DNA of 64,000 bases from Botryllus schlosseri. Lineage: Eukaryota. The notes under the pieces are model-generated. The model saw only the letters and a program-made list of their open reading frames with translations. It searched no databases and was not told where the DNA came from. This document shows positions 6,046 to 58,268 of the stretch, piece after piece. The stretch spans positions 21,638,001 through 21,702,000 of the forward strand of contig CM119374.1 of assembly GCA_051294905.1 (NCBI GenBank), read 5' to 3'. Made by a program: the position numbers and the translations under genes. Each line of letters starts with the position of its first letter. Within the stretch, counting starts at the first letter, position 1.

Positions 6046-6680
6046 CGGCCTCCGTGTCTGAGGCCACAATACGTAAGCGACAACAATACAATCTACTACC
6101 GCAAAGTATATACCTTTACAATTCTTTATAGTTTACGGCCTATTAAGGTGTGCGGCAACATCGGACACGCAACAATATAGAGATCGTATGCATATCACAC
6201 TGACCAATAGGTAAAGTATGACAGGATATCAATTCACGATGAATAAGTAATGGACCGTAAGTAGAAGGGCTCTGGTAAACGATAGCGATAAAGAAGATTG
6301 TAAAGCTTTCTTAATCAATATGTGACCACCAAGGTTAGAAGTTAGCACGGCGCCTCTAGTAACACGGTGTCATCACGTAATATGCAGTTTGATTTCGTAA
6401 CATGAAGCAGAAACGTATAAATCTTATGCTACCCAATCACAATCAATCGTGGATTGCAGTGCTTACCCGCTGCAAAGTCGTCGGCACACAGAAAGTATGC
6501 CCTTCGTTTGGCGTCACAATCTTATTTCAAGACACCGCTTTATGAATAGCCCATAACATCGCAGTACAAACAAGGTACACAATAGGTGGGCCTACAAGAA
6601 TGTCCTTCTGTAGTCCCCGTGACGTATTACGTTGTTGTGGTGCCTCTGGTTGCGAGCGAAACTACTCACTAAATCCGCAA

Positions 6681-6761
6681 AACGAGAGTTTCCCGGTAAG
6701 TATCCGACGGAACGAGAGTTTCCGAGTACCGCGCGAGAAAAAGGGCTGGCGAGTATATAAA
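6681..6761 (+). promoter_or_regulatory. Putative core promoter of A1: tandem AACGAGAGTTTCC motifs, CGCGCG, TATA box
   Basis: AACGAGAGTTTCC at 6681 and 6711 (30-bp period); TATATAAA 77 bp before the ATG; conserved at 51696-51775 upstream of A2. Confidence 0.55.
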
Positions 6762-6830: not shown

Positions 6831-7547
6831 ATGTTTAATAAACTTCACAGATGGAATGCTCCGGCTCCTCAAACCTACTCGGATGTCATCAATTCGCTAG
6901 AAGATGCAACTACGTTTAGCTTCACTGTCCGAAAAGAGCAGCGAGAGCCTTTCAGGCATACTTGCATCGAACTGCAATTCGACAATAAAGCCTGCTACAC
7001 CGTAAACCGACGGATACCCGACAAAACCTCACTGGCAGTGGCCGTGTTTGGAGCCGGTGCCGTTACCTACATCGAAAAAGCGAAGAGTGTTACATATCAA
7101 AACTGTGGGACGATATTCAAAAGTCAAAATAAATGGGAATCGGCAGCGGTCATAAGAAAATTACTGCAAGACGAACAAGAAGTATACAACCTTTGGGATA
7201 AAAATTGCCGAGACCATGTTACCAATATGGTGCTAAAAGCAATGAAAGACAAAACATGGGAATATACGTCGAGGTCTGACTTTTTAAATTTCGTCGAAAA
7301 AGTTCGGGAAGAAGACCGCCAGCGAGTCGCGGCCATTTTCATTTTTTACGCTTTTTCCATTTTACAAGTATCGTCTTCAATTTTTAGATTTAACGCCACT
7401 GTGGCATTAGCTTTATTTATATACGATAAATATTCGAGAAACATGATTACTTTGTTGGTGCTTTCGATAACGCCAGTAAACACGTTTAATACCGGTTTTA
7501 AAATGTGTTTCTTTCGCCAACTGCGAACTGTTGCTTCTATATTTTGA
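6831..7547 (+). CDS. Family copy A1: intronless permuted papain-like (PPPDE/DeSI- or LRAT-like) His-Cys protein with C-terminal membrane anchor, intact
   Basis: 238-aa ATG ORF. Motifs FRHTCIEL (His43) and YNLWDKNCRDH (Cys126); hydrophobic tail from residue ~166; TATATAAA at 6754-6761; AATAAA at 7647-7652; five paralogues in the window. Fold assignment is by motif resemblance only. Confidence 0.85.
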   Translation: MFNKLHRWNAPAPQTYSDVINSLEDATTFSFTVRKEQREPFRHTCIELQFDNKACYTVNRRIPDKTSLAVAVFGAGAVTYIEKAKSVTYQNCGTIFKSQNKWESAAVIRKLLQDEQEVYNLWDKNCRDHVTNMVLKAMKDKTWEYTSRSDFLNFVEKVREEDRQRVAAIFIFYAFSILQVSSSIFRFNATVALALFIYDKYSRNMITLLVLSITPVNTFNTGFKMCFFRQLRTVASIF

Positions 7548-11534: not shown

Positions 11535-11905
11535 ATGTTTCGCGAACTTCATCGACGGAGCTCTGACATGCCGCGAAATTGTTTTGATATTATATTCACA
11601 TTAGAGGAGTCTACGACTTTCTCGCTCACAATCCGCAAATAGTATGGCCCACCTATTCGACACACGTCAATAGAACTGCAATTCGACGGCAAAGCAAGCA
11701 ACACGGTAGATCGACGCATTGCAGCTCGCACAGTCACTCACATCGAGAACGCTAACGAAGTGACGTCGGAGAACTGCGGAATTGTGTTCCAGGGCAATGG
11801 CAAATATCATGTAACCCGTCCGGCAGTAACTGCAAAGACCTCGTCGCCACGACAGTGGCAAGAGAGATGGAAGGCAGACCCCAGAAATGGACATCATGGT
11901 ACGCT
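11535..11905 (+). pseudogene. Family copy B1, pseudogene
   Basis: ATG TTT CGC GAA CTT CAT CGA aligns with B2. Premature TAG at 11640-11642 (GAG in B2), an internal deletion near 11800, and a 3' end that is lost. Still reads IRHTSIEL and AAC TGC (NC) at 11828-11833; TATAAAA at 11457. Confidence 0.85.
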
Positions 11906-13672
11906 CGAACTCCTCGTTGGTACATCATTGGTACGAAATGGATGTTCTGATGATGATGACCGCCAACCGTAAAACTCTTGCATATCGATATAGTCCTGGT
12001 CGGGGACATCTTTTGGTCCTTTTAACGCGGGGTAGGAAGCCTTTTTCATTGAGCAGCCAGATTTACCATGTGTTTTCAATCGTCTTTGTCAATACAATGT
12101 GACGTCATAAACATACATTCGTGACGTCATTGCCAAAAATAACCCTGTTTCAAACACGTTTGTTTTAAATTGATTTTCGTTTTAAATGCAACCGTACTTC
12201 AGACCAATTAGTTTTACCAAAGCCTAGGCTTCCTAACTATGCTTTATAGACCCTGATTATTTGGAGGTTCCCGAAATGCAAATGTTTGAAATGATGTTTT
12301 GGCTATAGTTACCATATTTCAAGATCCGAGAAAGAGGTAACCCTCATAAAATTACAATAAGAGGGAAATTTGAGGGAAAATATCATCATAATGCAGATCG
12401 CCAGGTACTTTGACTAAAAGATTTAAAAAACAATACCACTTTCCGAGTCGATACCTCGAATCCGGTTTCCACGGACGGTTTCCGTTTGTTTTGACCTTTT
12501 TATCTTTCGTCAACCTCCGCGCGCCAGTTGACCTTTATATTCGTCTCTGTATGATTGCCTTACTCTTAAAACAAAACGAGAGGCATGATTACGAAAACTG
12601 AAGACATTTGGGCGTCATCGGAGGACATTTTAGTTTATTTGGCGTAATTATTTTAGTGCTGTGGAGAGACGCAGCGAACAATGCGAAATTGACAAATAAT
12701 TGATATCGGAGGGACATATCCATGCTCAATGCCCATGTCTCCGAAAATACCATTCTTGATCACCATCCAAATATTATGGGCGTCTCAACTAGATCCCCAC
12801 CGATGCGTACGCATGAGGAATATCTGTCTCAAGGTAAATATCGGTATCCACCGAGTCCGTATGGTATATATGGACCTGCCCAATGACGTCCTCACGCCTT
12901 CTATCGTGCTTCTTGGTCGTCCTTGCTATAAAACATCGGAAATTGCCAGTGCTAGAAAATGGGGATGACATGCGCCACTAACTACACCAGGACAATACAG
13001 GTGACTTGACGATCACGCTTCCTGAATCGCTATGATTCAACTTGCCGAGAACGAATAAGAAGCGTGCTTGTCTGTATCGCTTATTCGCAGATACTGTCAG
13101 ACCAGTCAGTACACGCCCGGGTAATTATGAAGTCTGATTTGAGGCTACCATCTCCGGGAATCTCTCCCGGTAAGCCAAAACATTGCGAGGTATGTGAGGA
13201 GTGAGGTGTTCCTTTTTTCATTGCCTTCCCGAAGACCGACGGATGAACATCATTGCAGTTTACTTATTGGTTAAAATACGGAAAGCTATTTTCCCTCAAC
13301 TATACGCCGCTTTAAATGCAAACGATAGTTTGTTTTACTCTATTGCAGTCTCATTGATGAATGAAGTTGATATGGGATTATGTAACACTTTGATATCGGC
13401 AGAAAATATCGATTTATTGGCCCAGTCTGGACTAAATTACTACTATCTTCTTAACTAGAGATAATATGTGACAAGTAAGTCGCAAAATAATGTATATAAC
13501 GGTTTTCTAGTCATACTTGCTGCGGTCTTCATATTTAAATGCGTTCGGTAGCTCATCGAAACCACCCAAGAGGCACAGGGAGTCGATGCATGTTAGTTTT
13601 AACGTAAGAGTGGTAAGACAATACTGAGCCTACAGAAGATCAACCACTGAGAGTGGCGGTCGCGGGTCTGGG

Positions 13673-14387
13673 ATGTTGGACAGAATCCACGAAATCGAAA
13701 ACGTACGAGGATATAGTCGAGTGCTTGCACAAATCCCCTGAGTTCAGTTTCACAGTTCGTAAAGAGAATTCAGAGCTTTTCAGGCACACCAATATAGAAT
13801 TACGTTTCGATGGCCAGGCGAGGTTTACTATCAACCGCAGGATACCGGACAAGACAGCGTTCGCTTCAGCCGTGCTAGGGACGCCGGCCGTTACTTACAT
13901 CGAAAAATCGAAGCAGACCGCCTCGGACAATTGTGGTACAATATTTACGAGCCGAGACCAAGATAAGTCGAAAGAGATGATCACAAATTTGCTACTTGAC
14001 CAAGAAATTAAATACAATCTCTGGGACAAAAATGGCAGAGACCACGTGACTAAAACAGTAATCAACGCGATGGCGGATAGCGATTGGAAGTATATTTCCA
14101 AATACGAATTTATAGACTTTGTTGAAAGAATACGGGAGGAGGACAGTAGACGCGTGGCCTTGTTGGCAATGTCGTACGTTGTACTCGTGTGCAGCATACC
14201 TGTCGCAATACTGCTGACCAGTGCTGGCGTACTAATTTTCAATTTCCTATTCGTCAAATACTCGCGAAACATTAAAACGTCTTTGATACGTTCGTTGTCG
14301 TTTTTTATATCGGAGTCCCTTTGTTGGAAAAGTGACATTGTGTCGCAGTGTCGATATATTTTGCTAACTTTTCGTTTAAGATTTTAA
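13673..14387 (+). pseudogene. Family copy C, probable pseudogene (5' frameshift, catalytic Cys to Gly)
   Basis: ATG at 13673 reads MLDRIH (cf. MFDKLH) but is out of frame with the long ORF through an apparent 14-nt deletion. There is no in-frame ATG upstream (TAA at 13614). NC is replaced by NG (GGC at 14034-14036). AACAAA (14452) lies where paralogues have AATAAA. Confidence 0.7.
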
Positions 14388-35850: not shown

Positions 35851-36404
35851 CATGCATGAGGTTCAGTTCAAATGTCAAATCGAACAATTCGACGATATTC
35901 CGTGGTGTTTGAACAAGATAGTATTCGATATGTAATGAAAGTGTCACATGACAGCTATTTCCGATATGTCTGATGAAAAATTGAATGCCCATTATGACGC
36001 GTAAGCCTATCGCAGCTCTATTGCTATACGATCACAAGGCTGGCGTATACGAGGAAAATTACAACTATTGTGAAAATGAGATTAATATTTCACATTAGGC
36101 TACATTTGAATCCGGATATATCGCGTATTGATCGCGGTATCATAAATATATACGTACATTTATTTTACATTAGATATTTCGGTGTGGATTTAGCTATGTC
36201 TTTGGTAGTTCGGGATATAGTAATAACTCGATATCACTCTCTCGTTAGTTCTTCCTGCAACAGAGCAACTTTGGCTGGAGAGATATCACATGAGTAATTT
36301 TCCAGTGTCACGCCGAAGGTTATTTTTGCAACGTACCGACTCCCATGCATTAACGCATGACTAATGCGTATCATAAATACGTAGCTTTGTGGATTTCTGC
36401 TAAG

Positions 36405-36440
36405 AAAAAGGTTTCAGGAAGTACACGCGCATATATATCG
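36405..36440 (+). promoter_or_regulatory. Putative displaced core promoter of copy D
   Basis: agaaaaagg...gtacacgcgc-ATATATAT resembles A1 gtaccgcgcgagaaaaagg...TATATAAA. It would lie ~100 bp from D's ATG if the transposon were removed. Confidence 0.4.
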
Positions 36441-36448
36441 GTCTAGAC

Positions 36449-39400
36449 CAGTGGTTCCCAACCTGGGGGTAAATTACCCCCCGGGGGTAATTTGGCATTT
36501 TTGGGGGGGTAAAAAGGGGTCGGATTTTAAGTAAAAAAATAATTGTTGTATTCATTGTTTTCTTCGTACTTTTGTGAAAAAAAATATAAAAATTCAAAGG
36601 TGACTTTCGTCAGTGGGTGTGCACAGCTTTTCCAAACTTCATAATGGCGCCGTCCTATCATAGCAATTTACAGCGTAGCTGGCATGGAGAGTTCCATCTG
36701 AATACGATCGATGTTGTGGTTTACAGCGACACCTATCGCTAGCGTAATACTTTTTAGCCGTCATTCAGATTTCAGAACAGAGATGTAAACATTAGCCGTA
36801 CTAACGCTGTCTTCCGATACTTGTGGAGATCATTTCAATAGTTGCTAAATTAGGATATATAAAAGCAATGTTTTCTTCTGTGTGATGACTGCATCTATTC
36901 TGCTGAAGCAGATTCCGAGTGTACATTATTCCAACGAGTGGAACCTGCCTGATTTTTTACATTCTGTATATTTATATCCAGTTATTGCAAATACTCCAGA
37001 AAGAACATATTTACAGTGGCCATAATGTGACAACTTGATTGAACAGTGAGCAGTCCGAGCACTTATGTATGAACTACAGACTGACAATATGTGAACCAAG
37101 AATGAGTGCAAATTTTGCTGACCTAACTATAAAAGTTGAAATTCCAACTGCAACTCCATACGCTGACAGATCAGTGACATCATTTTTCCAAAAATAGTCA
37201 AGTAACTTCTTCTACGATGATATGCGGAGGCTTCTGTGTTATACCGTGTATTTATCGACGGTTGTGTAAATGCGCATTGCGCAACGACGTGAACTACCGT
37301 ACTGGTATTGGGATACGCGTTACAGCACGGCTCATCTCCGCTCAGTGGCGTCACAATCATACGAAAAGTTAATCGGCGATTGTCGGCCGGCGACCCCATT
37401 GTGTGAAACAATGACGATTTAAGACTTTGAAGTCAAATTTCAGAGGGTTTCAGTTCCCGGGCCGGATTTCCACTTATGTTTTTGGAATCAGTGCGAAATT
37501 TGCTTTCGATTGATACCAGTTTCATTTACTTTTGTGCTCTGGTCCCAGCTGGAAGATTACCCAGAAACACACTAAAGCAGGTTGAAGCAGCAGCATCTGT
37601 ACGCCACCACTGGAGGCAGTGCAAAACGCAACATTGCTTACGGAGTTTCCATGCCAGCTACGCTGTAAATTGCTATGGTCCTATACTTCTTGAAGTTGTT
37701 TTTTTTCCTCCGTGACTGCTCTCATAGCTCATAGGTCAGTTTATAATTGAGTTTGTTAGAGATTTTATTCTTTGTGTGATAAAAGTTCCTTATTACCACA
37801 TTACTTCACCTTAGCATTTGATGCACTCTAATCATCCGCTTTTTACGCTCCTCAGAAGAACTGTCATTATGCCGGGCAAGAAGCGACATTATGCAGAGGC
37901 GTTTTTGAATCACGGCTTTGTAAACACACCACAACTGAATGGTGACGATCGACCACAGTGTGTCATTTGTCTCAAAGTTTTGACCAACGAAAGCCTAAAG
38001 CCGTCAAAACTGAACGAGCACCTCATGAAGCGTCATCCGCTACTGGCCGGAAAGAGTCGAGGATACTTTGAGGGCAAATCGAAGCAACTTCGAGGCATTC
38101 AATTTGGATCAGGTGGCATGGCTTCGGAGAAGCTAACGGCCGCTGTTGAAGTTTCGTACGAGGTGGCATACCGAATTGCAAAAAGTTCCAAGAACCACAC
38201 AATCGCAGAAGACCTTATTATGCCTTGTACCAAGTTGATCGTTTCCAAAATGTGTGGGGAAGATCAGGCCAAGAAGCTGGAAGGAGTATCAGTCTCGAAC
38301 ACCACAATTCGAAGAAGGGTTGATGATCTTGCAGCTGACATCCTTGCCCAAGTCGTTGCCGAAGTGAAGGCAAGTCCTCACAAAATGTTTTCTCTCCAGT
38401 TCGATGAATCCACGGATGTAAGCAGCTGCGCAGTTTTACTCGGATACGTTCGATACATTCACGAGTACTCTGTCAAGGAGGAATTTTTGCTTGCCAAGAA
38501 CTTGAAGACAACAACGAAAGGAGAAGATATCTTCAACCTTGTGAACGATTTCTTGGGCATGCACGGTTTGGAGTGGAACAATGTGCAGCAAATCTCTGTT
38601 GACGGCTGTCCCGCTATGATGGGTGGAAACCGCGGTTTCAGGGGCTTTGTGCAGCGGGAAAACTCGGACATTCATGTGGATCATTGCGCACTGCACCGCT
38701 ACTCGCTTGCGTCCAAATCTCTGCCGGAGAGCTTGAAAATAGTGTTCGACCAAGCAGTGAAGGTTGTAAACTTCATAAAAGCGAAGGAGTTGAACAGTCG
38801 TCTTTTCAAGGAACTGTGCAAGGAGATGGGGCAAAAATATGAGGCATTACTGTACCACACAGAGGTGCGATGGCTATCTCGTGGCAAAGTGATCACCCGT
38901 TTGTTTGAACTTCGTGAGGCTGTTGAGATTTTCTTGATAGAAAAGAAGTCGGGCTTGGCCGAATACTTTTCAGACCCCCATTGGATTGCCCAGCTTGGCT
39001 ACCTGGCCGATATTTTTGTTGAGTTGAACAAAGGGAATCTGTCAATTCAAGGCAAGTGTGTGACTGTGATCCACTCGAAAGAAGCTGTAGCAGCATTTAT
39101 CGCGAAGATGAAGTTGTGGATTAAGCGGGTCAACAGAGGTGTACTGGCACAGTTTCCAACGCTCGACATGTATCTCGAAGGCCTGGAGACAGAGAATGAA
39201 CCCGACTTCACAGAGGCGTTGAAAGGGAACATAGCTGACCACTTGGGACAGCTAGTCGAGAAAATGGAAGAATATTTTCCGGATTTGGACACCACTAACA
39301 TGGGATGGCTAACTGAACCGTTCAGGTGTCTTGACAGCCAAGTGGACGACGATGACTTTCCCGCCAAGGAGGAATTCATCGCCCTCAGAATGAGTGAGGC

Positions 39401-39975
39401 CTTGAAAATTGATTTCAAAGAAAAGAATTTGGATGCATTCTGGATAGAAAGACTTCAGGATGCACCAACATTGGCCACACGGGCATTGAATGTTCTCATC
39501 TCCTTTTCGACATCATATCGTTGCGAACAAGGATTTTCGACCATTGTAGGGTTGAAAACCAAAAAGCGGAATCGCCTGGATGTCGAAAACGACGCAAGAA
39601 TTGCCCTCAGTACAACCAAACCCAGAATTGCAAAGCTAGTGGTAGATATGCAAGCTCAACCTTCGCACTGATTGAATATTATCTTTGTCATTCCACGACA
39701 GTTGTCTTGGTGTTTGCTATCCCTTGCTTGCATTTGTTCCTTGGCAACGAACGTCTGCAGCCTTTTTCCACTGATAAACCAATTTATTTCTCTTTCAAAC
39801 TTGATGTCGCTTTTTCTCAGGTCGGTCTCTCCCTCAGGTAAAACTCCCATCCTGGACTGGACGATCGTTTTTGAGTGTTTAGTGATGAAACGTGGTTTTG
39901 ATGGAAGAGGGGGGTAAAAACCTGTCTGGAAAGTCTGGTTTTGGGTAACGGGGAGAAAAAGGTTGGGAACCACTG
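36449..39975 (+). mobile_element. Autonomous hAT DNA transposon, Buster subfamily
   Basis: 16-bp perfect TIRs CAGTGGTTCCCAACCT / AGGTTGGGAACCACTG; perfect 8-bp TSD GTCTAGAC (36441-36448 and 39976-39983, nnnTAnnn); full transposase ORF inside. Confidence 0.97.
37869..39671 (+). CDS. hAT (Buster/ZBED5-like) transposase, intact
   Basis: BED finger CVIC...HLMKRH; FSLQFDESTD (D); ISVDG (D); HCALH; RWLSRG; RCEQGFS (E); no stops. 600 aa from MPGKKRHY; an in-frame ATG also exists at 37821. Confidence 0.95.
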   Translation: MPGKKRHYAEAFLNHGFVNTPQLNGDDRPQCVICLKVLTNESLKPSKLNEHLMKRHPLLAGKSRGYFEGKSKQLRGIQFGSGGMASEKLTAAVEVSYEVAYRIAKSSKNHTIAEDLIMPCTKLIVSKMCGEDQAKKLEGVSVSNTTIRRRVDDLAADILAQVVAEVKASPHKMFSLQFDESTDVSSCAVLLGYVRYIHEYSVKEEFLLAKNLKTTTKGEDIFNLVNDFLGMHGLEWNNVQQISVDGCPAMMGGNRGFRGFVQRENSDIHVDHCALHRYSLASKSLPESLKIVFDQAVKVVNFIKAKELNSRLFKELCKEMGQKYEALLYHTEVRWLSRGKVITRLFELREAVEIFLIEKKSGLAEYFSDPHWIAQLGYLADIFVELNKGNLSIQGKCVTVIHSKEAVAAFIAKMKLWIKRVNRGVLAQFPTLDMYLEGLETENEPDFTEALKGNIADHLGQLVEKMEEYFPDLDTTNMGWLTEPFRCLDSQVDDDDFPAKEEFIALRMSEALKIDFKEKNLDAFWIERLQDAPTLATRALNVLISFSTSYRCEQGFSTIVGLKTKKRNRLDVENDARIALSTTKPRIAKLVVDMQAQPSH

Positions 39976-40067
39976 GTCTAGACACTAGGGATATCAGTTC
40001 ACTGAATAATAAAGAAACAACAGAATATAGTAAATAGAAAGCATCTCTCATACTACACATATTGGTA

Positions 40068-40784
40068 ATGGTTAATAGCCTGCTTTTATGGTCAGCTCCA
40101 CAATCTCATACCTACGACGATATCGTGGAACACTTGATGAAATCGACCACGTTCAGTTTCACAGTGCGCAAAGAAGCACGCGAGCCTTTTAGACACACCA
40201 GCGTCGAGCTACTGTTCGACGGAAAGCCACGCTTCACGGTGAACCGGCGAATTCCAGACAAAACACATATTATTTTCGCAGCGTTCGGAGCACCCGCGAT
40301 TACGTACGTCGAAAAAATCAAAGCAACTCCAACTTTTAATTGCGGAGAAATATTCCGAAGTACAAACAAAGACGAAGCGAAGATGGTGATTAAGAACTTG
40401 CTCGATGACCCAGAAGTAGAATATAAGTTGTGGGAAACGAATTGCCGCGACCACGTCACAAAGGCTGTTCTGAAAGCCATGCAAGGCAAGAAATGGAAAT
40501 ATACCTCAAAACAAGAATGTCTGGACTTCATCTTGCGGGCACGCATGGAGGACAGCAGAATCGTGTCTGCCATGACCATAATTTATGCACTAATTCTTTT
40601 TAATTTATCGGCAAGCCTCATTTTTCTCAATATTGGCGCATTGGCATTTAGTCTAATATTGAGCCACACCTGCCGCACCATGGCCGCCAAATTGGTGGAC
40701 GTTGTTGCAGTCACCTTGTCGATGGACAGCGAGAAGTTATATCAAGGTTCTTTTGCGATAGGGAATAAGTCTTATTTGGATTAA
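40068..40784 (+). CDS. Family copy D, intact ORF (238 aa from ATG 40068)
   Basis: FRHTSVEL and YKLWETNCRDH motifs intact; hydrophobic tail; AATAAA at 40900-40905; a hAT element ends 92 bp upstream of the ATG. Confidence 0.85.
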   Translation: MVNSLLLWSAPQSHTYDDIVEHLMKSTTFSFTVRKEAREPFRHTSVELLFDGKPRFTVNRRIPDKTHIIFAAFGAPAITYVEKIKATPTFNCGEIFRSTNKDEAKMVIKNLLDDPEVEYKLWETNCRDHVTKAVLKAMQGKKWKYTSKQECLDFILRARMEDSRIVSAMTIIYALILFNLSASLIFLNIGALAFSLILSHTCRTMAAKLVDVVAVTLSMDSEKLYQGSFAIGNKSYLD

Positions 40785-41022
40785 TTGTTTTCCACTGTGG
40801 CTTTTTACTTTTACAATATCCTTTTGAATGCAATTTCCGCTTTGTTTTATTTATTTATTCATATGGTCTGATATTTATTACTGTTGTGATACATTTTGTA
40901 ATAAAGCACTGTTTTGAGAATCAAGTATTTGTAATGAGTTTTCGACTAGCGCGTTTGTAACTGAAGTCCAGCCATTTACGAAATATTAGCGTCTAATGGG
41001 AACCCAAGAGTTCTTACTAAAC

Positions 41023-41640
41023 CAGAGGTCTCAAACTCAAATGTGCTCGCGGGCCGGTTTTCCCGTTTTGACGACGCCACGGGCCACAGCACTTATCTTT
41101 ATATCTTTCCAAGTTGGCCTTATTTGGCGGGAATGAATTGTCCTATTGAAAGTGAGCCGATCCAGCAGACTGACAGTAAACACACATCGTCAAAATGTGA
41201 TCTACTCTTGTATCAATGTAGGCCTGGCACGAAAATAATCATCACATATAGAACTATTTGAATAGAATTGTTGTTGTGCTTGATATATAATAATTATAAG
41301 ATATATACACCATATGGGCGGACATATGTATGATGCCATCATAAAAGCTATCGGGTTATAATTTTGCAGCTACTATGAATACTTTGAATTTAGCAGATTG
41401 ATAGGCTAATAGAGACACATCTGATATCAAAACATTTTTGGGTTGAGCATTGTAATTCAAATCCAGGATTCGGGTGTACTTCTGATATGTAGGCTATTAT
41501 TCTCATGGCCTGGCCAAATATCTTCAAATACAGGAGCAGAAAAAAATATAAATATAATATAAATACATTATTGAATGTGTCTTAGTGATTGAAATGTCGG
41601 AACGCCGAACGACCCATTGTTGTTACATCATTGGAGCGTA
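41023..41640. mobile_element. hAT MITE (CAGAGGTCTCAAAC family), truncated copy
   Basis: Left end identical to 21946 for ~30 bp and body similar; right TIR not found. Confidence 0.75.
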
Positions 41641-50521: not shown

Positions 50522-51695
50522 ATACGTACTTGCTGCGAGAAATGTTTAATCAAGCTGTTTGCGGATGCGAGACATCAGAAATCACGACGCAAACTGATAT
50601 TTTGTCACGTAGCACAACAGCATCACCGGAATATATACAAAAAAGTTCCAACTATTGTGAGCTTATTTTTCTCCATTTCATTCAGCGCTGTCATAACGTT
50701 ACCGCGTTAAATAGTTTACAAGTTGGTGCTCGAAATCGATGTGGCGTTCGATATGCGTATACTGTTTTTTTATTACCTATAGTTGGGTAAGTATCCGGGC
50801 CTACCATACGGCAGTACAGTGGTCGGATCATGGCGTGTGTATTGGGCCGAAACCCGACCCGGACCCAGCTTGAACCCGAAGGTCGTCTCAACACATGAGC
50901 TCTGAAATGTTATATCATCGATTATAATCAACTCGACATACTCGAGTGATCATCCGACCCGGTTTAGGCCCTTTTTATTCGCCAACCGGAGTCGAGCTCC
51001 GGCCGGGACCGGCCCAACTGAAATCCGACCAGAAACTGAAAAATCTGGTGCGACTACCCAATCAAAGGCCCCCGTCTCTGAGGCCACAATAAGCTAGCCA
51101 TCGTAGTACAGTCCACTACTGCAATGTATACCTTTATAATTCTTTATAGTGTACGCCCTATCAATGTGTGCGGCGGCATCGGACACGCAACAATATAGAG
51201 ATCGTATGCATATCACACTGACCAGCAATACCGAAATTATGGCAGGATAATAATTCACGATGAATGAGTAATGGACGATAGGTTGAAGGGATCTCGTAAA
51301 CGACAACGATTAAGAAAATTGTAAAGCATTCCAAACCACTATGTGACTACCAAAGTTACAACTTAGCCCGGCGCCTCTAGTGACACGTGTTCATCAAGTA
51401 ATATGTAGTTTGAGTTCGTTACACGAACTAGAAACGTATAAATCGTATGTCACGCAATCACAATCGTGGATTGCAGTGCTTTCCCGCTGCAAAGTCGTCG
51501 GCACACAGAAACTATGCCCTTCGTTTGGCGTCAAAATTCTATTTCAAGACACCGCTCTATGAATAGCCCACAACATTGCACTACAAACAAGGTACACAAT
51601 AGGTGGGCATACAAGAACATCATTCTGTAGTCGCCGTGACGTATTACGTTGTTGTGCCTCTGGTTGCGAGCGAAACTACTTGCTATATCCGACAA

Positions 51696-51775
51696 AACGA
51701 GACTTTCCCGGTATGTATCCGACGGAACGAGAGTTTCCGAGTACCACGCGAGAAAAAGGGGCGCAAGTATATAAA
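51696..51775 (+). promoter_or_regulatory. Putative core promoter of A2
   Basis: AACGAGACTTTCC (51696), AACGAGAGTTTCC (51726) and TATATAAA (51768). Confidence 0.55.
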
Positions 51776-51850: not shown

Positions 51851-52567
51851 ATGTTTGATAAACTTCACAGGTGGAATGCTCCGGCTTCTCAAACCTACAC
51901 TGATGTCATTAATTCGTTAGAAGATGCAACTACGTTTAGCTTCACTGTCCGTAAAGAGCAGCGAGAGCCTTTCAGGCATACTTGCATCGAACTGCAATTC
52001 GACAATAACGCCTGCTACACCGTAAATCGACGGATACCTGACAAAACCTCATTGGCAGTAGCGGTGCTCGGAGCCCGTGCCGTCACCTACATCGAAAAAG
52101 CGAAGAGTGTGACGTCTCAAAACTGCGGGACGATATACAAAAGTCAAAATAAATTGGAGTCGGAAGCGGTCATAAAAGTATTACTGCAAGACGCGGAAGA
52201 AGTCTACAACCTGTGGGATAAAAATTGTCGAGATCACGTCACAACCATGGTGCTTAAAGCAATGAAAGACAGAACATGGGAATATACGTCGAAATCTGAC
52301 TTTTTGAATTTCGTCGAAAAGGTCCGAGAAGAAGACCGCCAGCGAGTCGCGGCCATTTTTATTTTCTACGCTTTTTCTATTTTACAAATATCTTCAGCAA
52401 TTTTTATTTTCAACGCCGCTACGGCCCTAATATTATTTCAATACGATAAATATTCAAGAGACATAATCACTTTATTGGTGCTCTCCATAACGCCTTCAAA
52501 CACGCTTAATATCGGTGCTAAAATGGGTTTATTCCACAAACTGCGAGCTGTTACTTCTATATTTTGA
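51851..52567 (+). CDS. Family copy A2, intact
   Basis: 238 aa, about 85% identical to A1 (36 differences by my count). His and NC motifs intact; TATATAAA at 51768-51775; AATAAA at 52668-52673. Confidence 0.85.
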   Translation: MFDKLHRWNAPASQTYTDVINSLEDATTFSFTVRKEQREPFRHTCIELQFDNNACYTVNRRIPDKTSLAVAVLGARAVTYIEKAKSVTSQNCGTIYKSQNKLESEAVIKVLLQDAEEVYNLWDKNCRDHVTTMVLKAMKDRTWEYTSKSDFLNFVEKVREEDRQRVAAIFIFYAFSILQISSAIFIFNAATALILFQYDKYSRDIITLLVLSITPSNTLNIGAKMGLFHKLRAVTSIF

Positions 52568-57767: not shown

Positions 57768-58268
57768 ATGTTTCGCGACCTTCATCGACGGAACTCTGCC
57801 AAGTCGCGAAGTTATGTCGATATTATATCAACGTTAGAGGAGTCGATGAGTTTTGCGTTCACAATCCGCAAAGAGAATGGCGAACCAATTCGACACACGT
57901 CAATAGAACTGCAATTCGACGGTAACGCACGATACACGGTAGATCTGCGCATCGCAGCCCGCACTGTTACTTACATCGAAAACGATAGCGAAGTGAGGTC
58001 GGAGAACTGCGGAATTGTGTTCCAGAGCAATAACAAAGTCGAATCGAAAGCAGTAATTGACAAACTGCTTTGGGGAGACGGAAAAATGTTGTTATACAAT
58101 CCGTCGGAAAATATCGGCAAAGACCGCGTCGCTACGACTGTAGCAAGAGCGATGGAAGGCAGACCCTGGAAATGGACTTCTAAGCAAAAGGTTTTTGAAT
58201 TTATTGAGAGCGCCCGCACGGAAAATAGTAGAAGAGCGGGACTGGTTGTAATAGCTTGCATTGCATAA
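57768..58268 (+). CDS. Family copy B2: open 166-aa ORF, catalytic NC changed to IG, C-terminal tail truncated (pseudoenzyme or decaying gene)
   Basis: The ATG at 57768 (MFRDLHRR) is the homologous start. IRHTSIEL retained; YNPSENIGKD aligns to YNLWDKNCRD; stop falls after only ~8 hydrophobic residues; TATAAAAA at 57690. Confidence 0.6.
   Translation: MFRDLHRRNSAKSRSYVDIISTLEESMSFAFTIRKENGEPIRHTSIELQFDGNARYTVDLRIAARTVTYIENDSEVRSENCGIVFQSNNKVESKAVIDKLLWGDGKMLLYNPSENIGKDRVATTVARAMEGRPWKWTSKQKVFEFIESARTENSRRAGLVVIACIA

What the first reader, a model, noticed from the sequence alone, without database searches (positions are those of the whole stretch)
36405..40784. Intact hAT transposon wedged between the TATA-like box and start codon of copy D
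Seen: the TSD GTCTAGAC lies 2 bp after ATATATAT (36431-36438) and 84 bp before D's ATG. Removing the element restores a TATA-to-ATG spacing of ~100 bp, close to the 77-83 bp of the four paralogues with clear TATA boxes. Inference: a recent insertion has separated an intact gene from its core promoter. It may silence D, drive it by read-through from the co-oriented transposase, or act as an excisable on/off switch. An AATAAA at 40008-40013 could terminate transposase transcripts just before D.
Basis: partly seen in the sequence, partly recalled or inferred. Interest (0 to 1): 0.72.

Follow-up and report, generated by a model that had tools for sequence, protein, structure and literature searches.

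The report
Young hAT transposon splitting a gene's promoter
A recently mobile cut-and-paste (Buster/SPIN-like hAT) transposon sits between the TATA box and the predicted transcription start of one gene in a tandem family, and another sampled individual lacks it; this is a textbook promoter insertion whose effect on the gene is untested.

Summary
A 3,527-bp hAT element (36449-39975) has perfect 16-bp inverted ends, a perfect 8-bp target duplication GTCTAGAC and an open 600-aa transposase gene. It lies 2 bp after ATATATAT and 84 bp before the ATG of gene D.

New evidence:
- The assembly holds 16 copies. The 13 compared end to end are identical except for one base and two indels, and all have nnnTAnnn target duplications, so the family moved very recently.
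- The insertion is polymorphic. Contigs from a second sample (X5) join the two flanks without the element. The junction matches uninterrupted D-type paralogues, so it is an ancestral empty site, not an excision scar.
- Without the element, a TATA box lies 29-30 bp upstream of an initiator, TCAGTT. Both are conserved in three close paralogues just outside the window. The element sits at about -20 to -13.

Most likely the insertion allele has lost normal TATA-driven transcription of D, buffered by two intact close paralogues. No RNA reads covered D, so silencing, read-through and switching are all untested. Read-through is unlikely to yield D protein.

This is a new member of a known kind, of moderate-to-low interest. 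Another note of this scan (s1-244052) may describe another copy of this family; I did not check it.

The parts
36431..36438 (+). TATA-like box of gene D (ATATATAT; TATATAT from 36432)
   Evidence: Read directly. It aligns with TATATATA of three uninterrupted D-type paralogues and with TATATAAA of paralogues A and E. It lies 29-30 nt upstream of the initiator once the element is removed.
36441..36448 (.). Left copy of the 8-bp target-site duplication GTCTAGAC
   Evidence: It fits the nnnTAnnn pattern.
36449..39975 (+). Autonomous Buster/SPIN-like hAT transposon, 3,527 bp
   Evidence: It has perfect 16-bp inverted ends. The assembly holds 16 copies. The 13 compared end to end are identical apart from position 37437 and two indels. 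Subterminal GGGGGTAA repeats are present.
36659..37677 (.). Nested ~1-kb non-autonomous element inside the hAT 5' region, with 30-bp perfect inverted ends and a 7-bp duplication GTCCTAT
   Evidence: repeat I1. Free-standing copies at 78-91% identity occur elsewhere in the genome, and all full-length hAT copies carry it.
37869..39671 (+). Transposase gene, 600 aa, no intron
   Evidence: ORF. Pfam hAT dimerisation domain at threshold. There are 528 homologues; the named ones among the 120 listed are ZBED5-, FAM200-, SCAND3-, 'Zinc finger BED-type' and 'Ribonuclease H-like domain' proteins, the best non-self match is 65% and the best named match is 57% in a crustacean. A CxxC...HxxxxH zinc-finger motif is visible near the N-terminus.
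39976..39983 (.). Right copy of the target-site duplication GTCTAGAC
   Evidence: A junction contig covering 39951-40178 is present in the reads of sample X1 at single-copy depth.
39994..39999 (+). Predicted initiator TCAGTT of gene D (A+1 at 39996; predicted 5' UTR 72 nt)
   Evidence: It is conserved as GTCAGTT in two of three D-type paralogues. This is a prediction; there is no RNA evidence.
40008..40013 (+). AATAAA hexamer in D's 5' UTR, the first canonical poly(A) hexamer on the + strand after the start of the hAT
   Evidence: It is polymorphic: A40008G in sample X5.
40068..40784 (+). Gene D, intronless 238-aa ORF; PPPDE/LRAT-like thiol-enzyme fold with C-terminal membrane helices
   Evidence: all invariant residues kept, including His43 and Cys126. 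Its own AATAAA is at 40900.

Best explanation
Shown: a very young, still polymorphic insertion of an autonomous Buster/SPIN-like hAT transposon lies in the core promoter of gene D. D is an intact, intronless, TATA-driven member of a large tandem family of membrane-anchored PPPDE/LRAT-like proteins.

Inferred from sequence: the element landed at about -20 to -13, between the TATA box (-30) and the initiator (+1).

Inferred mechanism:
- In the insertion allele the TATA box and all upstream regulatory DNA are moved 3.5 kb away and now point into the transposon's 5' end.
- D's initiator keeps only 13 bp of native upstream sequence, followed by the TATA-less transposon 3' end.
- Normal regulated transcription of D is therefore lost or strongly reduced, giving a hypomorphic or null allele.
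- The allele is probably tolerated because two intact D-type paralogues (80-84% amino-acid identity) lie 48 and 90 kb away.

Landing near a transcription start is the known habit of Buster elements, so no special targeting needs to be invoked.
For: - Anatomy of the element: inverted ends, target duplication and ORF.
- Family assignment: the named relatives are Buster-derived genes; target duplications are nnnTAnnn in 13 of 13 copies, the TcBuster consensus (PMC3499496); size, 16-bp ends and a single roughly 600-aa ORF match active Buster elements (PMC12637253); the inverted end is identical to hAT-N3_AC and one base from SPIN (PMC3014272).
- Youth: 16 copies, of which the 13 compared end to end differ from each other by nothing but two indels; the D-locus copy has one private base.
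- Polymorphism: the X5 contig joins 36438 to 39978 with ATAGGC in between, at depth 59.7, and is the only X5 contig over position 40008. X1 has the filled junction at depth 41, against 43.5 in the flank.
- The X5 contig is allelic: it is 98.6% identical to D, whereas the closest paralogues in the assembly are about 88%.
- The X5 allele is ancestral: its AGGC matches the uninterrupted paralogues, and it carries a different SNP 25 bp from the site.
- Core promoter: TATATAT lies 29 nt before TCAGTT. Such pairs occur about 3 times per 2 x 60 kb by chance, so about 0.003 are expected within 110 bp upstream of an ATG. Both motifs are conserved in the D-type paralogues.
- TcBuster prefers transcription start sites (PMC3499496).
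Against: - There is no expression evidence of any kind for D, and the start site is predicted, not mapped.
- The paralogues are young (82-89% nucleotide identity), so conservation of the TATA box and initiator may reflect lack of time rather than constraint.
- TATA-less initiation from the retained initiator, or a promoter in the transposon's 3' end, could keep D expressed.
- Contigs show presence, not absence, so the zygosity of X1 and X5 is uncertain.
- An X5-specific extra paralogue, rather than an allele, cannot be formally excluded.
Confidence: 0.6

Rival explanations
1. The insertion is real but has little effect. D is still transcribed at near-normal levels from its retained initiator, from a cryptic promoter in the transposon's 3' end, or from enhancers acting across 3.5 kb.
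For: - The initiator and the whole 5' UTR are untouched.
- Many animal promoters work without a TATA box (general knowledge).
- The insertion allele appears at full single-copy depth in X1 with no second haplotype visible, so it is at least tolerated.
Against: - Every family member inspected has a TATA box at the canonical distance, which suggests TATA-dependent, probably inducible genes.
- At -30 from the initiator the filled allele has GGAACCACTG, nothing TATA-like.
Confidence: 0.25
2. D is expressed through the transposon. Transcripts starting at the displaced TATA box or at the transposase promoter read through the element and produce hAT-D chimeric mRNAs that supply D protein.
For: - The element and D have the same orientation.
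- The element has no AATAAA or ATTAAA on its sense strand, so its transcripts probably run into the flank.
Against: - A transcript started at the displaced TATA box would carry 19 upstream ATGs and the 600-codon transposase ORF before D's ATG, and any read-through transcript carries at least that ORF, so D would hardly be translated.
- The first AATAAA (40008) precedes D's ATG.
- No RNA read of X23 crossed this copy's junctions. The junction-crossing reads belong to another hAT copy (L010) and to a related MITE locus (L031).
Confidence: 0.07
3. The site works as an excisable on/off switch that has already operated, and the X5 allele is an excision scar.
For: - The family is evidently active.
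- hAT/Buster excision leaves small insertions and deletions (PMC3499496).
- The X5 junction differs from the predicted clean empty site at three positions within 6 bp.
Against: - The X5 junction has only one copy of the duplicated 8-mer.
- Its deviating bases (AGGC) are exactly those of the uninterrupted paralogues.
- It sits on a different haplotype, with a SNP at 40008 and about 2.4% differences in the flanks. The insertion is far too young for that divergence to have arisen after an excision.
Confidence: 0.05
4. The insertion is an assembly artefact: a multi-copy repeat wrongly placed.
For: The element has 16 identical copies, which can confuse assemblers.
Against: - The 8-bp duplication flanking the element is perfect.
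- A read-derived contig from X1 spans the right junction into unique D sequence at single-copy depth, and X1 shows no empty-site joint.
Confidence: 0.01

Closest known systems
TcBuster / AnBuster and other active Buster-family hAT transposons (PMC3499496, PMC12637253)
   Same: - 8-bp target duplication with nnnTAnnn.
- 16-bp inverted ends.
- One intronless ORF of about 600 aa with a BED-type finger and the hAT dimerisation domain.
- Insertion close to a transcription start.
- Signs of very recent activity.
   Different: - At most 65% protein identity to anything in the searched database.
- It is 3.5 kb rather than 2.5-3.0 kb because a foreign 1-kb element is nested in its 5' region.
- Transposition has not been assayed.
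- No tree was built to place it inside the Buster clade.
SPIN ('Space Invaders') and hAT-N3_AC elements (PMC3014272)
   Same: - The inverted end CAGTGGTTCCCAACCT is identical to hAT-N3_AC and one base from SPIN (CAGYGGTTCTCAACCT).
- The D-locus duplication GTCTAGAC fits their NYYTARRN pattern.
- It has a large associated MITE population (about 770 terminal matches).
   Different: - Only the ends were compared.
- The best listed vertebrate proteins are about 40-44% identical, so this is not SPIN itself.
- Several of its target duplications do not fit NYYTARRN.
Classical unstable promoter alleles caused by hAT elements, such as Tam3 at nivea/pallida in Antirrhinum, Ac/Ds alleles in maize and Tol2 in the medaka tyrosinase gene (recalled from memory, not checked here)
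   Same: An autonomous hAT element inserted in or next to the core promoter of an otherwise intact gene, segregating against an empty allele, with potential for excision.
   Different: No phenotype, no expression change and no excision event has been observed here. The gene also has close intact paralogues.

Membership tests
hAT superfamily | 8-bp target-site duplication | tested here: met
   A perfect 8-bp duplication flanks 12 of the 13 copies that have both ends, including this one. The thirteenth (L010) is offset by one base.
hAT superfamily | Short terminal inverted repeats beginning CAG | tested here: met
   16-bp perfect CAGTGGTTCCCAACCT.
hAT superfamily | Transposase with the C-terminal hAT dimerisation domain | tested here: met
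   Pfam PF05699 scores 21.8 bits against a cut-off of 21.4, so it only just passes. Homologues carry PF14291, PF27073, PF27046 and PF05699.
hAT superfamily | Catalytic DDE triad intact | not tested
   No reference structure matched by sequence. Activity is inferred only from identical dispersed copies and the polymorphic insertion.
Buster family of hAT | Target consensus nnnTAnnn | tested here: met
   T at position 4 and A at position 5 in 13 of 13 left-flank 8-mers. The consensus is as stated in PMC3499496.
Buster family of hAT | Transposase groups with Buster-derived proteins (ZBED5, ZBED8, SCAND3, FAM200) rather than with the Ac or Tip groups | tested here: inconclusive
   The named hits bear those names or the generic 'Zinc finger BED-type' / 'Ribonuclease H-like domain' labels. 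No phylogeny with Ac and Tip references was built.
Active (currently mobile) transposon | Near-identical dispersed copies and insertion polymorphism | tested here: met
   16 copies, of which the 13 aligned end to end show at most one substitution. There is an empty-site allele in X5 and a filled one in X1. The ratio of hAT depth to flank depth differs between samples, roughly 28, 7 and 11 (a rough measure).
Active (currently mobile) transposon | Observed excision or new insertion | not testable with these tools
   This needs pedigree or somatic/germline sequencing, or a transposition assay.
TATA + initiator core promoter of gene D | TATA box about 30 nt upstream of an initiator, in the reconstructed empty site | tested here: met
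   TATATAT at 36432 and TCAGTT with A+1 at 39996 give 29 nt after removing the element and one duplication copy.
TATA + initiator core promoter of gene D | Conservation in paralogues | tested here: met
   Uninterrupted D-type paralogues read TTATATATAGGCA(T/C)AGACAGTAGGGATGTCAGTTCA. Paralogues A, C, E and F have TATA boxes at -77 to -83.
TATA + initiator core promoter of gene D | Mapped transcription start | not testable with these tools
PPPDE / LRAT / NlpC-P60-like papain fold (gene D family) | Fold similarity and a conserved His/Cys pair | tested here: inconclusive
   - AF2 model, pLDDT 77.6.
- Best non-helical matches are CLN5 (Z 7.4), Aichivirus 2A (5.5), TseH (5.1), the DUF862 deSUMOylase (5.0) and PLAAT4 (4.5).
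- LRAT and DUF4105 clusters match at E of 1e-3 to 4e-2.
- His43 is invariant and Cys126 is present in 8 of 10 sequences.
- The scores are middling and there is no Pfam hit.

The most novel reading that the evidence does not exclude
The transposon has captured the inducible TATA promoter of a stress- or immune-type gene. At this locus, sense transcription of the element would then be switched on by whatever induces the D family, and perhaps bursts of transposition would follow. Separately, this family would be a naturally active Buster-type element in a marine animal, with a large MITE following and a hitch-hiking foreign element, and could serve as a native transgenesis or insertional-tagging tool.
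Probability: 0.1. Interest if true: 0.6.

Novelty: new member of a known kind. Interest (0 to 1): 0.38.

Why it matters
It documents a hAT/Buster family that is active, or was until extremely recently, in this marine animal. It also gives a concrete segregating insertion allele that cleanly separates a TATA box from its initiator. That is a natural experiment on core-promoter architecture and on how tandem gene families buffer transposon hits, and a ready marker for population work.

It does not reveal a new mechanism. Promoter-proximal insertion, polymorphism and possible excision are standard hAT behaviour.

Tried and rejected
- RNA evidence. This says nothing either way about D expression. 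The X23 reads crossing the hAT ends were traced to another copy (L010) and to a related MITE at C5:4388807, not to this locus.\n- Exact look-ups of D, A, E, F and the transposase in the protein collection found nothing.\n- Contigs encoding the distant homologues P0004 and P0005 gave no usable information on 5' ends. One starts with adapter sequence and the other had no DNA.\n- The weak profile match of the D family to the HSP90 N-domain (E about 0.01) was rejected as spurious in view of the fold results.\n- GerD hits in Pfam and NCBIfam were far below threshold.\n- The bacterial-type promoter and terminator scan is irrelevant for a eukaryote and was at chance level.\n- I considered that the X5 empty-site contig might come from a paralogue. 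This was rejected because the closest paralogues in the assembly differ from it at many positions.\n- I considered an excision scar and rejected it as the main reading (see rivals).\n- I did not try to identify the species.
Full report
**1. What is there**

- ATATATAT is at 36431-36438, followed by CG.
- GTCTAGAC is at 36441-36448.
- A 3,527-bp element runs from 36449 to 39975, bounded by perfect 16-bp inverted ends (CAGTGGTTCCCAACCT).
- A second GTCTAGAC is at 39976-39983.
- After 84 more bases comes the ATG (40068) of a 238-codon ORF, gene D (40068-40784).

The element carries one long ORF on the same strand as D (ATG 37869, stop 39671, 600 aa).

**2. What the element is**

- The protein just passes Pfam's hAT dimerisation domain (PF05699, 21.8 bits against a cut-off of 21.4).
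- It has 528 homologues. The named ones among the 120 listed are ZBED5-, FAM200-, SCAND3- or ZBED8-like proteins, or carry the generic labels 'Zinc finger BED-type' and 'Ribonuclease H-like domain'. Those names belong to Buster-derived genes.
- The best non-self match is 65% identical. The best named matches are 57-60% identical and come from crustaceans.
- An N-terminal CxxC...HxxxxH motif is visible in the translation.
- The ends carry subterminal GGGGGTAA repeats: three direct and one inverted at the 5' end, and one at the 3' end.
- Across 13 copies with both ends, the flanking 8-mers all read nnnTAnnn, and 12 are perfect duplications. That is the consensus reported for TcBuster (PMC3499496).
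- Size, 16-bp ends and a single roughly 600-aa ORF match Buster elements shown to be active in cell assays (PMC12637253).
- The 16-bp end is identical to that of hAT-N3_AC and one base from SPIN (PMC3014272).

I therefore file it as a Buster/SPIN-like hAT. I built no tree, so clade membership rests on hit names and the target consensus.

**3. How young it is**

- A 32-mer from the ORF occurs 16 times in the 495-Mb assembly, always exactly, on ten different contigs.
- Thirteen copies were aligned end to end. Among themselves they have no substitution at all.
- The D-locus copy has a single private base (A at 37437, T elsewhere). The read-derived contigs of X1 show only T there, so even this may be an assembly error or a rare variant dropped from the contigs.
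- There are two length forms, 3,527 and 3,576 bp. They differ by a 49-bp partial duplication at 36676.
- One derivative has a 699-bp deletion inside the ORF and still has a perfect duplication.
- With at most one change in roughly 46 kb of aligned copies, the family amplified extremely recently.
- The last 23 nt of the element match about 770 places in the genome with at most one mismatch. Read depth over the 3' terminus is more than ten times that of the element body. A large MITE population therefore shares its ends.

**4. The insertion is polymorphic**

Contigs of four public runs were laid on 35900-41100.
- X1, probably the source sample, has a contig spanning 39951-40178. This is the right junction running into unique D sequence. 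Its depth is 41 against 43.5 for the flank, and X1 shows no empty-site joint.
- X5, from another sample and study, has a 173-nt contig at depth 59.7. It matches 36410-36438 exactly, then has ATAGGC, then matches 39978-40115 with two differences. It is the only X5 contig over position 40008.

Is the X5 contig an allele, or does it come from a paralogue?
- The assembly holds three closer D-type paralogues just outside the window: C4:21629937 (89%), C4:21587328 (88%) and C4:21716903 (84%), each with its left flank directly adjoining.
- In this stretch they differ from D, and from the X5 contig, at many positions.
- The X5 contig is 98.6% identical to D, so it is best read as an allele of D.

Is it an excision scar? 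I think not, for three reasons.
- It has a single copy of the 8-mer.
- Its deviating bases (TATATATATAGGCCTAGAC against the reference-derived TATATATCGGTCTAGAC) are exactly those of the uninterrupted paralogues (TTATATATAGGCATAGAC and TTATATATAGGCACAGAC).
- It sits on a different haplotype, with a SNP at 40008 and about 2.4% differences over the left flank. An excision from so young an insertion could not have acquired that divergence.

The X5 allele is therefore an ancestral empty site.

The ratio of hAT depth to flank depth is about 28 in X1, 7 in X5 and 11 in X6. This hints at copy-number differences between individuals, but word depth is a rough measure.

**5. Where in the gene it landed**

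Removing the element and one 8-mer gives CATATATATCGGTCTAGACACTAGGGATATCAGTTCAC.
- TATATAT then lies 29 nt before the A of TCAGTT, a canonical TATA-to-initiator arrangement.
- A loose TATA...initiator pattern occurs about three times per window on both strands by chance. About 0.003 would be expected within 110 bp upstream of a given ATG.
- The three uninterrupted D-type paralogues keep the TATA box, and two of them (L034, L035) also keep the initiator as GTCAGTT at the same spacing; in L033 it reads GCAGGT.
- The more distant paralogues A, C, E and F have TATA boxes 77-83 nt before their ATGs, with TCA-type initiators about 31-33 nt downstream in A, C and F.
- The predicted start site of D is thus about 39996, giving a 72-nt 5' UTR. 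The duplicated 8-mer occupies about -20 to -13.

All of this is inference from sequence. No start site has been mapped.

**6. The gene that was hit**

- D belongs to a lineage-restricted family. Only five database homologues were found, at 43-47% identity to D and with no Pfam domain.
- The family forms a tandem array. Six members or fragments lie in the window, and the DNA search with D found seven more matches outside it, reaching C4:21.83 Mb.
- D keeps all 33 invariant residues, including His43, and Cys126 of the NCRDHV motif.
- Several neighbours are decayed:
  - B has no ATG and has lost the Cys.
  - C has a stop codon.
  - F is truncated.
  - The paralogue at C4:21716903 has stops and ACG in place of ATG.
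- Two D-type paralogues are intact, at 84% and 80% amino-acid identity.
- An AlphaFold model (pLDDT 77.6) gives an N-terminal alpha/beta domain and long C-terminal hydrophobic helices.
- Its best non-helical structural matches all belong to one superfamily:
  - CLN5 (Z 7.4 over 145 residues)
  - Aichivirus 2A (Z 5.5)
  - the NlpC/P60 effector TseH (Z 5.1)
  - a DUF862/PPPDE deSUMOylase (Z 5.0)
  - PLAAT4 (Z 4.5)
- LRAT and DUF4105 clusters appear in the AlphaFold DB search.
- These scores are middling. The reading of a membrane-anchored PPPDE/LRAT-like thiol enzyme is likely but not proven.

**7. How it most likely works**

- Shown: an active-looking transposon is present in some chromosomes and absent from others, at a defined point upstream of an intact gene.
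- Inferred: that point lies inside the core promoter.

Consequences I consider most likely (about 0.5-0.6):
- In the filled allele the TATA box and all upstream control DNA are 3.5 kb from D's initiator.
- The sequence at -30 is then GGAACCACTG.
- Regulated transcription of D therefore fails or drops.

The displaced TATA box now sits 10 bp from the transposon's 5' end and would direct initiation near 36461, in the sense orientation of the element.
- Such a transcript has 19 upstream ATGs before the transposase ATG, because the foreign 1-kb element lies in between. It is therefore a poor transposase mRNA.
- It is a worse D mRNA.

The element has no AATAAA or ATTAAA on its sense strand.
- Its transcripts probably end in the flank.
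- That hexamer lies in D's native 5' UTR and reads GATAAA in the empty allele. I see it as incidental, not as an evolved terminator.

Buster elements favour transcription start sites (PMC3499496), so the location needs no further explanation. Two intact close paralogues make a null allele easy to tolerate.

**8. What could not be settled**

- Expression: no read of the single-cell RNA run X23 (about 3% sampled), and no contig of X6, lay on D.
- The reads that cross hAT ends come from another hAT copy and from a related MITE locus.
- Silencing, residual expression, chimeric transcripts and excision-based switching therefore remain hypotheses, ranked under the rivals.

**9. Verdict**

This is a new, evidently live member of a known transposon family doing what such elements are known to do. 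It is useful as a marker, as a possible tool and as a natural promoter-splitting allele, but it is not a new kind of system.

Noticed in passing
window 36659-37677 (inside the hAT): A roughly 1-kb non-autonomous element with 30-bp perfect inverted ends and a 7-bp duplication (GTCCTAT) is nested in the hAT 5' region. Every full-length hAT copy compared carries it. Free-standing copies elsewhere are only 78-91% identical, so an older element is hitch-hiking on the young hAT.
   Followed up: partly
L008-L013 (3,576-bp form); L016 = G000:C3:33974616-33977443: The hAT has two length forms that differ by a 49-bp partial duplication of the nested element's terminus (at window 36676). There is also an internally deleted copy (699 bp missing from the ORF) that still has a perfect 8-bp duplication.
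   Followed up: partly
window 39915-39975; genome-wide: The 3' terminal 23 nt of the hAT match about 770 genomic sites with at most one mismatch. Read depth over the terminus is more than ten times that of the element body. A large MITE family shares its ends, for example at L031 = G000:C5:4388600-4388806.
   Followed up: partly
window 41017-41060: An extremely abundant short repeat (word depth above 150,000 in X1 and X5, against about 45-60 for single-copy DNA) lies just downstream of gene D. It begins CAGAGGTCTCAAACTC, which looks like another hAT-type MITE end.
   Followed up: no
window 6831-7547, 11535-11890, 13653-14387, 40068-40784, 51851-52567, 57768-58268; G000:C4:21.587-21.83 Mb: A tandem array of intronless, TATA-driven genes (six members or fragments in the window, seven further DNA matches outside it). 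They encode roughly 238-aa proteins with no Pfam domain, a predicted PPPDE/CLN5/LRAT-like fold, conserved His and NC(R/E)DH motifs, and C-terminal membrane helices. Several members are decaying: one has lost its ATG, others have stops or are truncated.
   Followed up: partly
window 40782: In sample X5 the stop codon of D reads CAA instead of TAA, which would lengthen the poorly conserved C-terminal tail. Most other X5 differences in the last 60 codons are also non-synonymous.
   Followed up: no
L010 = G000:C9:22212908-22216483: Twenty-five single-cell RNA reads (X23) run from this copy's flank into the hAT 5' end, so this copy lies inside a transcribed region. Its flanking 8-mers are offset by one base (GCTCTAGT and CTCTAGAT).
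   Followed up: no
window 36449-39975: The ratio of hAT depth to single-copy flank depth differs between samples: about 28 in X1, 7 in X5 and 11 in X6. This suggests copy-number differences between individuals, although word depth is a rough measure.
   Followed up: no
window 6640-6750 and 51650-51750: The promoters of paralogues A and E share a twice-repeated motif, AACGAGAGTTTCC(C/G), and a TGACGTATTACGT element upstream of the TATA box. These look like binding sites for inducible transcription factors.
   Followed up: no
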